DNA of 64,000 nucleotides, from the NCBI RefSeq assembly GCF_036588685.1, contig NC_086379.1, positions 31,744,001 to 31,808,000 on the forward strand, read 5' to 3'. This document shows positions 9,428-52,599 of the stretch, in pieces (position 1 is the first letter of the stretch; every line of letters starts with the position of its first letter). The notes beneath the pieces were generated by a model, which was not told where the DNA came from, made no database searches, and saw only the letters and a list, made by a program, of their open reading frames with translations. The position numbers were made by a program, and so were the translations under genes. This DNA comes from Mytilus trossulus (taxonomy: Eukaryota).

Positions 9428-9565
9428 AATGCTAGCAAACTTGTTTGTAAGCATCGCCAAACAAAATTTATCAATCCATGACAAAAAATTAACTTTAACA
9501 CACAAAACAAATTAAAAATTTAGGTTTTGAACAAACATATTAATTGAACTGAGTTTAACAACTAA

Positions 9566-10604
9566 ACATTAGTTCGTCGAAGTATATCAACTATACTAGA
9601 CATTAGTTCAACGAAGTATATCAACTATACTATACAACAGTTCAACGAAGTATATCAACTATACTATACAACAGTTAAACGAAGTATATCAACTATACTA
9701 TACAACAGTTCAACGAAGTATATCAACTATACTATACAACAGTTCAACGAAGTATATCAACTATACTATACAACAGTTCAACAACGAATATCAACTTTAC
9801 TTACAACAGATCAACGAAGTAATCAACTTTACTATACAACAGATCAACGAAGTAATCAACTTTACTATACAACAGATCAACGAAGTAATCAACTTAACTA
9901 TACAACAGATCAACAAAGTAATCAACTATACTATACAACAGTCCAATGAAGAGTATCAACTAAACTATACAACAGATCAACGAAGTAATCAACTTTATTA
10001 TACAACAGATCAACGAAGTAATCATCTTTACTATACAACAGATCCACGAAGTAATCAACTTTACTATACAACAGAACAACGAAGTAATCAACTTTACTAT
10101 ACAACAGATCAACGAAGTAATCAACTTTACTATACAACAGATCAACGAAATAATCAACTTTACTATACAACATATCAACAAAGTAATCAACTTTACTAAA
10201 CAACAGATCGACGAAGTAATCAACTTTACTATACAACAGAACAACGAAGTAATCAACTTTACTATACAACAGAACAACGAAGAATATCAACTATACTATA
10301 CAATAGTTCAATGAAGAATATCAACTAAACTATACAACAGATCAACGAAGTTATCAACTTTATTATACAACAGATCAACGAAGTAATCAACTTTACTATA
10401 CAACAAATCAACGAAGTAATCAACTTTATTATACAACAAAACAACGAAGTAATCAACTTTACTATACAAAAAAACAACGAAGTAATAAACCATACTATAC
10501 CACAGATCAACGAAGTAAAAAACTTTACTAAACAAAACATCAACTAAGTTATCAACTTTACTTAACAAAAGATTAACGAAGTAATCAACTTCACTATACA
10601 ACAG
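9566..10604. repeat. Minisatellite of ~31 units of 33-34 bp (CAACAGATCAACGAAGTAATCAACTTTACTATA) inside the Ngaro element
   Basis: Tandem array seen directly; 34-bp variants on the left, 33-bp variants on the right. Confidence 0.95.
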
Positions 10605-30566: not shown

Positions 30567-30701
30567 ATTTCATTATCTTTTGAGGCGAGATGTATAGGGG
30601 ACACAGCCACGTTTACTTTTATTTCTATAGAAGTCGCTCTTCACTATACTACTACCTGTCGATACATTTATTTTTGGCATTGCACAAGTCATGTCTTCTT
30701 T

Positions 30702-30759
30702 GACTATTAATGACGTTAAAATACTAAATCCCTGTGATGTGTTTTAGTCGATTTTAGTC
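30702..30759 (+). promoter_or_regulatory. Putative SECIS element
   Basis: GACTA tta ATGAC GTTAAAATAC t AAA tccctgtgat GTGTTTTAGT CGAT tt TAGTC: helix I, AUGA core, 10-bp helix II, AAA 12 nt after AUGA, 3' NGAN. Confidence 0.75.
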
Positions 30760-32191
30760 TCTGATGCATGATTTTTTACTATTAATTGGTTTTGGCTTTT
30801 AACTAGCTGTCAGTAACTGCGAGTACTCTCAAATCGTAATATCTTGTTAATTCGACCTGTTGATACTGTTTATAATGCTTTTTTGTCATTTTTTATTTAT
30901 ATGGATCTTTGCTGTATACCAGCTTTGATTATTTGTAATATCTTCAATTTTTCACTTATTCTTACAACATTTGTATAAACTTTAAGATTATAAAAAAACG
31001 TTTTTTTTCTAAAGTGAACATTGATTGGTTAAATATTTCTCAGTGTGTTTGAATTTGTTTGTTAGCCTTTTGGTCATGAATGTTTGTCTCTAATATTTAA
31101 TTAACTGTGCATTTGTATTCAGATATCGCAGATCAAATTTATTCGTTCATTGTGTAATCATACGTTTTTTGATTGAGTTAAGTCTGCCAATTGATATTTT
31201 ATCGTATGTTTTTATATGTTGTGATGTTATGCTATTGTTTCAGAAAAAGGGAGAAGGTTTGGGCCCATTAAAACGTTTATTCCCGCTGCAAATGTTTGCA
31301 CCTGTCCTAAGTCAGGAATCTGATGTACAGTAGTTGTCGTTTGTTTATGTAATATATACGTGTTTCTCGTTTCTCGTTTTGTTTATATAGATTAGACCGT
31401 TGGTTTTCCCGTTTGAATGGTTTTACACTAGTTATTTTGGGGCCCTTTATAGCTTGTTGTTCGGTGTGAGCCAAGGCTCCGTGTTGAAGGCCGTACTTTA
31501 ACCTATAATGGTTTAATTTTTGAATTGTTGTTTGGATGAAGAGTTGTCTCATTGGCACTCACACCTTATCTTCCTATATCTAGCCATAAATACAGATAGT
31601 ACAGAAATATTTTGCTACACGTATACAACTTTTGTCTTCATATTTTCGTTTTTCTTTTGAATAAAACAAACCATTTATTCATAAATTTATGTAATAATTA
31701 TGTCTACTATTTCATTTTCGCTTCAGTTATATCATCTTTAGTCCTCCTTCGCCTTTTTCATTCTTTTTTTTCCATCTTCTATTGATATGATAAAAGTTAA
31801 GAAAAGTATTAACCACTGAATTTCTAATAATAAACATCTTCTTTGAAAATCAGGAGCAATACTTTCTACAATCAGGATTAAATACTCGTAACATTTATTT
31901 GTATACTTTGAATGCCACAGACCATCTTGTATCCAGTATTGGTTGATGTTTGTACACGTCCAAATTACATTAGCTAAGACAAAGAAATACACATACAAAC
32001 CCAGACTCGAAATGAAACACATGAAATAGTATATGCTATGTTAGATTTCAATCAAGACTATATAAGCATTTTAAAATGGGCAAATTTAGCCCATTAATGT
32101 GGTGAACAGGACAAAATACTGATAGATGAGTGCTAACTAAAACAAAACTATATCATGATATCTCTAAAACAAATGTAAAGTATATCATATA

Positions 32192-50400: not shown

Positions 50401-50727
50401 AGTACACATAACACAACATACGCAACTGAAGATAAAGCACAACGAACCCCACCAAAATGTTGGAATAATGTCAGGTGCTCCGAAAACAAAGCATTTCTTA
50501 CTTTACATACGACACCCGTCGTATTACTCTTATGAACTCATTAATAAGATTTAAAGTTTGTATGGCATTACATAAAAGTATATTGGTAATTGATCCCCTA
50601 ACTATATATATATTACAGGCATTTTCTAAATTTAGGCATTTTGTAAAATGCCTGAAAACTTTAGGCATTTTCCAAAATGCCTGCAAGAATCACTCATTAT
50701 TTATAATGACAAAATTTGCTAGGCATT

Positions 50728-51635
50728 AGTAGCAATAAACAAAAAAACTATGTTAATGGGACATGCTTTGGTACTTTATATGCCCTTGAATTTTTACTAG
50801 ATAACATTTTTGTTCGCTTTGGGGATTCTGTATATCGGCAGATTATCGGAATTCCAATGGGGACTAACTGTGCACCACTTATTGAGGACCTTTTTTGTAT
50901 TGTTATGAGTTACAATTTATGACAAAAATAAGCAAAGACCCATCGAAACAACATCTGATAAACAAATTTAATAATACTTTTAGATATTTGGATGATATTT
51001 TGGCTCTCAATAATGACGACTTCAGTATGTTTATTAATGAAATTTATCCTGTTGAACTTACTTTAAATAAAGCTAATACTAACAATGACCACTGCCCTTT
51101 CCTCGATCTTGATATCTATATCACTGACGGAAAGCTGAATACTAAAATTTATGATAAAAGGGATGATATTTCATTTCCTATCGTTAATTATCCGTTTGTA
51201 GATGGTGACGTTCCCTTGTCACCATCTTACGGTGTTTATATATCTCAACTTGTACGATTCGCTCGTGTATGTAACAATGTTTTAGATTTTAACGAGAGAA
51301 ATTTATGTATTACTGAAAAATTATTATACCAGGGTTTTCGATATCACAAACTAGTCAAAACATTTACTAAATTCTATCATCGGTATAAAGACATCATTCG
51401 TAAATATAGCTCAACATGCAGACTTCTTATACGTTCAGGTATATCACATCCAATTATTTACGGAAATATTCTTTACAAAGCACAAAGGTGTCAGTATTCA
51501 CCTCAGAAACTTACAAAACCTTTGAATAGACTTATTAAGAAGGGATATAATTACGATACTGTTGTCAAGTCATTAAAGATTGCATATTTTGGCGTTAATA
51601 TTGAGTCACTGATAAGGTCTTTGCATCGGAACTAA
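50728..51635 (+). pseudogene. Penelope-like RT (GIPMGTNCAP, FRYLDD, IYDKRDD, SYGVYISQL) with one frameshift near 50895
   Basis: ORF-track entries 50716-50922 and 50895-51635 join via a 1-nt frameshift; ends RSLHRN* with no C-terminal endonuclease. Confidence 0.9.
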
Positions 51636-51685
51636 ACACATTTATTCTAAAAACAGTTGTTGGCATGACACGGGTTATGTTCTTC

Positions 51686-51752
51686 TCATATATGTTATGA
51701 TGGTATGACACTAAACCCCTAACGGGAAGGATTGTGCCTGATGTTCATATGA
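51686..51752 (+). promoter_or_regulatory. Putative type II SECIS element
   Basis: ATATG tt ATGAT GGTATGACACT AAA CCC ctaac GGG a AGGATTGTGCC TGAT gtt CATAT: AUGA core, helix II with 2 mismatches, AAA 12 nt downstream, apical mini-stem, 3' UGAU. Confidence 0.75.
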
Positions 51753-52599
51753 TGAAATCATAATCTTTCAGTCAGTTTAATTGAAGTCTGGAGCTGGCAT
51801 GTCAGTAAACTGCTAGTAGTCTGTTGTTATTTATGTATTATTGTCATTTTGTTTATTTTCTTTGTTTACATCTTCTGACATCAGACTTGGACTTCTCTTG
51901 AACTGCATTTTAATGTGCGTATTGTTATGCGTTTTCTTTTCTACATTGGTTAGAGGTATACGGGGAGGGTTGAGATCTCACAAACATGTTTAACCCCGCC
52001 GCATTTTTGCGCCTGTCCCAAGTCAGGAGCCTCTGGCCTTTGTTAGTCTTGTATTATTTTAATTTTAGTTTCTTGTGTACAATTTGGTAATTAGTATGGC
52101 GTTCATTATCACTGAACTAGTATATATTTGTTTAGGGGCCAGATGAAGGACGCCTCCGGGTGCGGGAATTTCTCGCTACATTGAAGACCTGTTGGTGACC
52201 TTCTGCTGTTGTTTTTTTTATTTGGTCGGGTTGTTGTCTCTTTGACACATTCCCCATTTCCATTCTCATTTTTTTTTTCCAAAATGCCTAGAAAAATTGA
52301 AAGGCATTTTACAAACTGCCTGAAATTATTTCATTTCATGGAATAAAATCTAAAGAAAAACAATTGAAAGCTTTGAACACCAGAGCTGTTTTATTTGTGA
52401 TAATTACTGAATTAAAAAAGAAGAGCTTAAATAATCCAGAATACAGTTTATTGTTTTACTACAATTCACACAAGCACAGAACTTGACATTGTTTTTTTTA
52501 AATTTCTTCACTGTTGGTTTCTGAAATACAGAGTGAGTACGTACTTAACATAGTTTCACTAAAAAGAACATACTCTTAGATCTGTTCATTGTTTCTTTT

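What the first reader, a model, noticed from the sequence alone, without database searches (positions are those of the whole stretch)
51660..51822. Second, sequence-divergent Penelope-like family with the same SECIS fold on a shared larger helix
Family 2 has a type II SECIS (ATGA 51697-51700, AAA 51713-51715, TGAT 51739-51742) with different helix sequences but the same spacing as family 1. In both families the SECIS is enclosed by an extra stem (AAGTCATG/CATGATTT vs GGGTTATG/CATAATCT). Both also have an upstream TGGCA able to pair with a downstream conserved TGTCAGTAA(A)CTGC.AGTA.TCT block. Structure kept across divergent sequence argues for function. The enclosing multi-helix scaffold is not part of a standard SECIS and may be undescribed.
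Basis: partly seen in the sequence, partly recalled or inferred. Interest (0 to 1): 0.8.

Follow-up and report, generated by a model that had tools for sequence, protein, structure and literature searches.

The report
Retrotransposon SECIS with a long basal stem
The flagged stretch is the selenocysteine-insertion hairpin (SECIS) left in a dead, shortened copy of a Naiad-type Penelope-like jumping gene, a kind described in 2021. Its "extra stem" is a real, conserved lengthening of the normal SECIS lower helix, and the proposed outer TGGCA/TGTCA closure has no support.

Summary
Window 51660-51822 is the start of the 3' tail of a 5'-truncated Naiad Penelope-like retroelement (copy 50726-52273, + strand). 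Full-length units of this family elsewhere in the genome carry four in-frame TGA codons at conserved cysteine positions. The SECIS therefore belongs to the known kind of selenoprotein-coding Naiads (Craig et al. 2021). This scan has already reported it several times on other DNA of this genome.

- **SECIS:** Rfam SECIS_1 scores 30.1 bits, below its gathering score of 35.
- **Outer stem:** It is real. It forms in single-sequence folds of the 8 near-clade lineages folded. It covaries among 14 related sequences, and 4 of its 8 pairs change on both sides. An equivalent outer helix appears without guidance in 17 more distant Sec-coding lineages. I read it as a two-tier extension of SECIS helix I, not a new scaffold.
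- **TGGCA/TGTCA pairing:** It shows no covariation, and every observed change breaks a pair.
- **Conserved block:** It is a small separate hairpin with a conserved loop. Its role is unknown.

This copy has no UGA codon left, so its SECIS is a relic. Verdict: new member of a known kind, modest interest.

The parts
50726..52273 (+). 5'-truncated copy of the family-2 Naiad retroelement (end of the RT gene plus a 638-nt 3' tail)
   Evidence: blastn of 30 genomic copies against the window copy gives shared ends at L001:591-2138, which is window 50726-52273. RNA-read depth drops to zero after 52273.
50895..51635 (+). Remnant ORF for the C-terminal part of the reverse transcriptase; stop TAA at 51633-51635
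   Evidence: ORF list. 94% identical to the RT part of a full-length unit.
51660..51669 (+). Conserved upstream motif TTGGCATGAC (TTGGCATTGC in family 1 at 30674-30683); partner unknown
   Evidence: Conserved in 9 lineages. The proposed pairings are not supported.
51672..51679 (+). Outer stem, 5' strand (GGGTTATG)
   Evidence: Forms in the MFE fold. 90.3% of cells paired, 4 of 8 pairs with changes on both sides, covariation score reached by 0 of 500 shuffles.
51683..51691 (+). SECIS helix I, 5' strand
   Evidence: Rfam alignment. 8 of 9 pairs change on both sides.
51697..51700 (+). AUGA of the SECIS core (kink-turn quartet)
51702..51711 (+). Helix II, 5' strand. The window copy has C at 51709 where nearly all RNA reads have T, which would pair with A.
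   Evidence: 10 of 10 pairs covary. Polymorphism.
51713..51715 (+). Unpaired AAA
51717..51726 (+). Apical mini-helix III (CCC / GGG), which makes this a type II form
   Evidence: Helix III also covaries in the distant group.
51729..51738 (+). Helix II, 3' strand
51739..51742 (+). UGAU, the 3' side of the core
51747..51756 (+). Helix I, 3' strand
51759..51766 (+). Outer stem, 3' strand (CATAATCT)
51793..51817 (+). Downstream hairpin: stem GCTGGC / GCTAGT around a conserved 13-nt loop ATGTCAGTAAACT.
   Evidence: RNAalifold on an unguided alignment finds it. 93.6% of cells paired, 2 of 6 pairs with changes on both sides.
30670..30839 (+). Family-1 counterpart: motif 30674-30683, outer stem 30686-30693 / 30767-30774, SECIS 30702-30759, hairpin 30802-30807 / 30819-30824
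   Evidence: Model R1 scores it 62.9 bits.

Best explanation
**What it is.** The stretch is the proximal 3' untranslated region of a Naiad-type Penelope-like retrotransposon. Its single gene has an N-terminal GIY-YIG endonuclease and a C-terminal reverse transcriptase. The gene needs UGA read as selenocysteine at four conserved cysteine positions.

**The hairpin.** The SECIS is the distal part of a hairpin of about 95 nt (51672-51766). From the base upwards it has:
- an 8-bp outer stem;
- a small internal loop;
- helix I;
- a larger internal loop with the AUGA/GA kink-turn core;
- helix II;
- the unpaired AAA;
- a short apical helix.

The outer stem is a second tier of helix I.

**Inferred role of the outer stem.** It most likely keeps the SECIS folded and accessible to SBP2 within a long, highly structured tail. 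This step is inferred, not shown.

**Other conserved elements.** The upstream motif TTGGCAT(T/G)(G/A)C and the downstream hairpin with the loop nnnCAGyAACU are separate conserved elements of unknown role. They may be recognition sites for the element's own reverse transcriptase.

**This copy.** It is 5'-truncated, keeps no UGA codon, and carries a mismatch in helix II. Its SECIS is an inherited relic with no job here.
For: **Element identity**
- Tandem full-length units of about 4017 bp exist elsewhere in the genome.
- Their ORF has TGA at four sites: CHAKKuLTC, ITuKTNSIIY, LLTuNKPGC and DKAANNIIIVu (u marks the TGA codon).
- It also has the GIY...YVG, CxC, GxKY, DKA and YLDD motifs.
- These are the selenocysteine sites and the domain order described for Naiads in PMC8557442.

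**SECIS**
- Sub-threshold but end-to-end SECIS_1 matches occur at homologous places in the window.
- The same holds in 13 of 20 other lineages, at 26.6-38.8 bits, with one above the gathering score.
- A SECIS-like hairpin accompanies every lineage with TGA at the site 8 residues after DKA.
- The far Cys-coding Naiads (40-46% identity) have none.

**Structure**
- Among 14 related sequences, 89.4% of cells are paired against 74.2% in shuffles. 25 of 36 pairs change on both sides. Slid controls give 34-47%.
- The outer stem alone has 90.3% of cells paired, and 4 of 8 pairs change on both sides. No shuffle of 500 reaches its covariation score. Slid controls give 22-58%.
- All ten single-sequence folds, eight near-clade lineages and two distant loci, form an outermost stem.
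- An unguided MAFFT plus RNAalifold run on 17 distant lineages also predicts an 8-bp outer helix around helix I. Pair types there include AU/CG/GC, CG/UA and AU/GC/UA.
Against: - The Rfam score is below the family's gathering score (30.1 against 35).
- The near-clade covariation count was made on an alignment fitted to the model's structure, which leans towards that structure.
- Only about ten independent lineages were available in the near clade.
- Three of them (L070, L087, L112) have a weakened outer stem.
- Six near-clade lineages (L053, L057, L070, L087, L091, L112) have a Cys codon at the one Sec site I could see, yet keep the hairpin. The link between the hairpin and Sec use is therefore not one to one.
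- No experiment shows Sec insertion or SBP2 binding.
- RNA reads show transcription from both strands, rising towards the 3' end. This fits passive transcription of many dead copies and says nothing about function.
Confidence: 0.8

Rival explanations
1. The upstream motif pairs with the downstream block. The pairing would be either TGGCA with TGTCA, or GCATTGC with GTAA(C)TGC in the hairpin loop as a pseudoknot. It would close a multi-helix domain around the SECIS that is new for SECIS elements.
For: - Both elements are unusually conserved while the SECIS helices between them change freely.
- In 7 of 8 lineages the block region is among the four best duplex partners of the motif within 620 nt.
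- With a different gap placement, one pair of the second pairing reads UA, GU and AU in different lineages, and another reads GU, AU and GC.
Against: - TGGCA/TGTCA: 85.7% of cells paired against 84.8% in shuffles, no covariation, and every change breaks a pair.
- GCATTGC/GTAAcTGC: 88.9% against 88.4%, and no pair changes on both sides.
- Duplex energies of -7 to -11 kcal/mol are ordinary for a best-of-620-nt search. The family-1 block is not among its top four partners.
- The two pairings cannot both form, and the second overlaps the hairpin stem by two bases.
- L057 and L088 break it.
Confidence: 0.12
2. The long hairpin is mainly a structural or recognition element of the retroelement tail, for example for its reverse transcriptase. 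On this reading its SECIS-like core is incidental or no longer used.
For: - Several near-clade lineages have Cys at the visible Sec site but keep the hairpin. Some of them have altered cores: UUGA in L088 and L091, GUGA in L070.
- Rfam scores are mostly below the gathering score.
Against: - The AUGA/GA core and the AAA are the most conserved letters of the hairpin, while its helices vary.
- All lineages with TGA at the site after DKA have the hairpin.
- The far Cys-type Naiads have no such hairpin.
- Intact units need four UGA codons decoded to make any protein.
Confidence: 0.05
3. The shared outer stem is only common descent of two related repeats, with no constraint on structure.
For: - The two families are homologous (69% column identity over the tail).
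- Related sequences can exceed shuffles without any structure.
Against: - Pairs change on both sides and stay paired: GC, AU and CG at one pair; CG and UA at another.
- Slid controls drop to 22-58% paired.
- An equivalent helix with a different sequence is found without guidance in the distant group.
Confidence: 0.03

Closest known systems
Selenoprotein-coding Naiad Penelope-like elements of clams and spiders (Craig, Yushenova, Rodriguez, Arkhipova 2021, PMC8557442)
   Same: - Same domain order: GIY-YIG, then CxC, then RT.
- In-frame UGA at the cysteine before GIY-YIG, at the first CCHH cysteine, in the CX2-5CxxC finger and 8 residues after DKA.
- SECIS just after the stop codon.
- Tandem units and 5'-truncated copies.
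   Different: - A new host (a mussel-like genome with 14 large chromosomes) and new families.
- All four site classes occur in one element. The paper reports the first CCHH cysteine as a UGA site in clams and the CX2-5CxxC finger cysteines in spiders.
- The SECIS is 52 nt (family 2) or about 137 nt (family 1) after the stop, not 1-21 nt.
- The form with an apical mini-helix (type II) replaces the type I reported.
- The paper does not mention the conserved second-tier basal helix, the upstream motif or the downstream hairpin in the sections I read.
Canonical eukaryotic SECIS (Rfam RF00031; parts helix 1, core, loop 1, helix 2, apical A's, optional helix 3, as listed in PMC3753652)
   Same: AUGA/GA core, helix II of 10 pairs, unpaired AAA, optional helix III, and a helix I below an internal loop.
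   Different: - Helix I continues below a second internal loop into a further 8-bp stem, giving a hairpin of about 95 nt.
- In the distant Naiad group the 5' strands of helix I and of the outer helix are the stop codon and the last codons of the gene.
3' UTR stem-loops recognised by the reverse transcriptases of non-LTR retrotransposons (from general knowledge; a lead only)
   Same: A small conserved hairpin with an invariant loop in the tail of a retroelement that copies its RNA by target-primed reverse transcription.
   Different: - No binding has been shown.
- The hairpin lies about 450 nt from the 3' end.
- Penelope-like RTs are closer to telomerase.

Membership tests
Eukaryotic SECIS (RF00031) | AUGA ... 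GA core able to form the G.A/A.G kink-turn quartet | tested here: met
   ATGA 51697-51700 and TGAT 51739-51742, aligned to the model's core. The same holds in family 1.
Eukaryotic SECIS (RF00031) | Helix II of about 9-12 pairs followed by unpaired A's; optional helix III | tested here: met
   10 pairs, all covarying, then AAA 51713-51715, then the CCC/GGG mini-helix.
Eukaryotic SECIS (RF00031) | Score at or above Rfam's gathering score | tested here: not met
   30.1 and 28.4 bits against 35. One related lineage reaches 38.8. Twelve others score 26.6-34.7.
Eukaryotic SECIS (RF00031) | Lies in the 3' UTR of an mRNA with an in-frame UGA at a Cys/Sec position | tested here: met
   Met for the family: four TGA codons in full-length units, and TGA after DKA in all SECIS-bearing distant lineages. 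Not met for this truncated copy, which starts downstream of the last TGA.
Eukaryotic SECIS (RF00031) | Binds SBP2 and directs Sec insertion | not testable with these tools
   Needs a binding assay and a read-through reporter.
Naiad clade of Penelope-like elements | One ORF with an N-terminal GIY-YIG endonuclease, a CxC linker, the GxKF/Y and DKA motifs, and a C-terminal RT | tested here: met
   Read directly in the translation of L048:2320-6336: IIY...YVGET, SCNCS, GPKY, DKA, FDFSTLY, GIPMGTNCAP, YLDD. Pfam gives no hit for either piece at E <= 0.01, so this rests on motifs and on the paper's description.
Naiad clade of Penelope-like elements | Tandem or partial-tandem insertions and 5'-truncated copies | tested here: met
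   Tandem units with a period of 4017-4037 bp. Copies are truncated at many different 5' points and share one 3' end.
Naiad clade of Penelope-like elements | Placement inside the Naiad clade in an RT/EN tree | not tested
   No tree with reference Naiad, Chlamys and canonical PLE sequences was built.

The most novel reading that the evidence does not exclude
The invariant upstream motif and the invariant loop of the downstream hairpin contact each other or one protein. Together with the two-tier basal helix they would make a retroelement-specific SECIS domain. Such a domain could couple selenocysteine decoding to recognition of the same RNA by its own reverse transcriptase.
Probability: 0.1. 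Interest if true: 0.65.

Novelty: new member of a known kind. Interest (0 to 1): 0.3.

Why it matters
- It extends selenoprotein-coding transposons, first described in 2021 in clams and spiders, to further very abundant families in a mussel-like genome.
- It shows that their SECIS sits on a conserved, covarying two-tier basal helix across lineages that share only about half of their RT residues.
- Thousands of 5'-truncated copies scatter ready-made SECIS hairpins through the genome. This is the route to new selenoproteins that the 2021 paper proposed.
- The structural detail is useful for annotating such SECIS elements, most of which fall just below Rfam's threshold. It does not change how SECIS elements are understood.

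Tried and rejected
I could not fetch the many other 60-80% lineages seen among protein hits.
- **Own-genome protein searches** with three foreign lineages returned only families 1 and 2. The genome adds no further near-clade lineages.
- **Viral contigs** gave nothing.
- **Genome contigs** gave only contaminant contigs of distant lineages.
- **Rfam at gathering threshold** finds nothing in the window.
- **Pfam** finds nothing in the ORF pieces.
- **RNAalifold on the unguided near-clade alignment** found helix II and the downstream hairpin. It missed helix I and the outer stem because the 3' strands were misaligned by indels. I therefore used a covariance model (R1).
- **A duplex scan** for any partner of the motif gave only ordinary energies.
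- **A hammerhead reading of the block** was considered at the start and dropped. The core boxes are absent and Rfam gave no hit.
- **A dimerisation role** for the palindromic loop CAGTTAACTG was dropped because the palindrome is not kept in L112, L056 or L057.
- **RNA reads** show no sharp ends near the SECIS or the block. Both strands are covered, so the reads do not show autonomous expression.
- **The far Cys-type tails** could not be aligned.

Full report
**Setting.** The window is AT-rich animal DNA with about 31% G+C. The genome has 1.3 Gb in 541 contigs, 14 of them chromosome-sized. The finding lies just after the stop codon (TAA 51633-51635) of a 246-codon ORF remnant. I compared 30 genomic copies with the window copy. 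The repeat spans 50726-52273, is cut off at its 5' end, and shares its 3' end with all other copies. The family has hundreds to thousands of copies at 96-100% identity.

**What the element is.** Longer copies occur as head-to-tail tandems with a period of about 4017 bp. One unit is L048:2320-6336. It has a single long reading frame broken only by four TGA codons, written u below:
- CHAKKuLTC, in the CX2-5CxxC finger;
- ITuKTNSIIY, the cysteine before GIY-YIG;
- LLTuNKPGC, the first cysteine of the CCHH finger;
- DKAANNIIIVu, eight residues after DKA.

The frame also shows GIY...YVG, a CxC motif, GPKY, and the RT motifs FDFSTLY, GIPMGTNCAP and YLDD. Craig et al. 2021 (PMC8557442) describe exactly this domain order and these selenocysteine positions for Naiad Penelope-like elements of clams and spiders. 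They also describe a SECIS just after the stop codon. Pfam recognises neither ORF piece, so the assignment rests on motifs and on the paper. Other agents of this scan reached the same reading on other pieces of this genome.

**The SECIS.** Rfam SECIS_1 aligns over its whole length to 51687-51751 (30.1 bits) and to 30702-30759 in family 1 (28.4 bits). Both scores are below the gathering score of 35.

I collected 80 related loci from metagenome contigs and 32 from contaminated bacterial assemblies. In 13 of 20 lineages tested, SECIS_1 is the match at the homologous place, at 26.6-38.8 bits.

The codon eight residues after DKA reads as follows:
- TGA in families 1 and 2, in L056 and in every locus of the group that is 50-58% identical. 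All of these carry the hairpin.
- TGT or TGC in every locus of the 40-46% group, where neither my pattern scan nor model R1 finds a SECIS. Their tails do not even align.
- A Cys codon in six near-clade lineages (L053, L057, L070, L087, L091, L112), which still keep the hairpin. Their endonuclease sites were outside the contigs, so I cannot say whether they still use Sec.

**The outer stem.** In single-sequence folds the outermost stem forms in all ten sequences tried. These were eight near-clade lineages and two distant ones.

I built a covariance model from four family-2-type lineages with the hand-drawn structure. It aligned 14 near-clade sequences. On that alignment:
- The whole structure has 89.4% of cells paired against 74.2% in shuffles and 34-47% when partners are slid. 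25 of 36 pairs change on both sides.
- The outer stem alone has 90.3% of cells paired. Four of its eight pairs change on both sides (for example GC/AU/CG and CG/UA/UG). Only 4 of 500 shuffles reach that count, and none reaches the covariation score.

This alignment is fitted to the structure, so I looked for an independent test. MAFFT plus RNAalifold, without any guidance, was run on 17 lineages of the distant group. It predicts helix III, helix II, helix I (GTAC/GTAC and variants) and an 8-bp outer helix (ATGACAGG with CTGTCGT and variants). 20 of 25 pairs change on both sides.

In that group the 5' strands of helix I and of the outer helix are the stop codon and the last codons of the gene. 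The extra stem is therefore real and old. It is best described as a second tier of SECIS helix I below a small internal loop. Helix 1 is a standard SECIS part (PMC3753652). SBP2 contacts helices I and II and needs them stable (PMC1874613). That the tier serves SECIS stability is my inference.

**The proposed closure.**
- TGGCA (alignment columns 6-10) with TGTCA (columns 164-168) gives 85.7% of cells paired against 84.8% in shuffles. There is no change of any kind that keeps a pair, and all departures are broken pairs.
- I noticed a second possible pairing, GCATTGC with GTAA(C)TGC. It fares no better in the tool: 88.9% against 88.4%.
- With another gap placement one of its pairs reads UA, GU and AU. 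L057 and L088 break it, and it overlaps the hairpin stem.
- A duplex scan puts the block among the four best partners of the motif in 7 of 8 lineages. The energies are ordinary.
- The upstream motif is strikingly constant (TTGGCATTGC in five lineages). In the distant group its position corresponds to codons near the end of the gene. That correspondence is weak, at 9 of 18 bases.

**The block.**
- Stem RCWNGC/GCNWGY: 51793-51798 with 51812-51817, and 30802-30807 with 30819-30824.
- It encloses a conserved 11-13-nt loop, nnnCAGyAACU.
- Cells paired are 93.6%. The first pair runs AU/GU/GC. The third pair switches UA to AU in L087. The fourth pair is mismatched in five sequences.

The distant group has, at the matching place, a longer covarying hairpin flanked by ACAGTTACTC and GAGTAC. 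The near-clade block looks like its shortened relative. Its function is unknown, and a role in recognition by the element's RT is a guess.

**This copy.** It begins downstream of the last TGA, so it cannot make a selenoprotein. It differs from most copies at two places:
- 51709 is C in the window and T in 25 of 44 sampled copies. T restores a helix II pair.
- 51807 is A in the window and T in 30 of 44 sampled copies.

About 97-99% of RNA reads carry T at both places. RNA-seq depth rises towards 52273 on both strands and then stops. This fits many dead copies transcribed passively. No sharp RNA ends were seen near the SECIS or the block.

**Limits.**
- The twister-like fold that other agents report further down the tail (window about 51962-52028) was not tested here.

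**Verdict.** This is a real SECIS of a known kind in new families and a new host. It has a genuine but unsurprising extension of helix I. The multi-helix closure is not supported.

Noticed in passing
L059-L090, L111, L113 (for example L073:3190-3290, L080:3300-3400): In Naiad lineages 50-58% identical to family 2, the stop codon and about the last ten codons form the 5' strands of SECIS helix I and of the outer helix. A terminating ribosome must therefore unwind the base of its own SECIS.
   Followed up: partly
L053, L057, L070, L087, L091, L112 (codon before the RT match): Six near-clade lineages have TGT or TGC instead of TGA eight residues after DKA, yet keep the SECIS hairpin. Some have altered cores (UUGA in L091, GUGA in L070). 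This could be Sec-to-Cys reversion in progress or mixed Sec/Cys use.
   Followed up: partly
L145-L176 (for example CBDDTI010000653.1, NZ_WACP01000033.1 Paenibacillus tengchongensis, FXLX01000049.1 SUP05, JACCHT010000015.1 Bathymodiolus symbiont): Contigs filed under bacterial genomes and MAGs encode Naiad reverse transcriptases, some with TGA at the Sec site. They look like animal host DNA that contaminates those assemblies.
   Followed up: no
window 51962-52028 and 52130-52180: G+C-rich conserved stretches lie further down the same tail. Other agents of this scan read the first as a rearranged twister ribozyme. Rfam gave no hit at gathering or E <= 10 in 51300-52300, and RNA reads show no sharp start there.
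   Followed up: no
L094, L104, L107, L115, L117, L120, L121 (about 100-170 nt after the stop): Tails of the Cys-type far Naiads share a conserved motif, ACGACGGGTGnn...GCAGGAnnTGCTTACCnnnCCGGAGCACCTGA. It may be a structured RNA of its own.
   Followed up: no
L049:209-1271 and 9487-10000: A 60-bp tandem satellite flanks a Naiad tandem on both sides. This fits the microsatellite and satellite insertion bias reported for these elements.
   Followed up: no
window 51709 and 51807: The window copy belongs to a minor subfamily (C and A at these places). About 97-99% of RNA reads from three RNA-seq runs carry T at both.
   Followed up: yes
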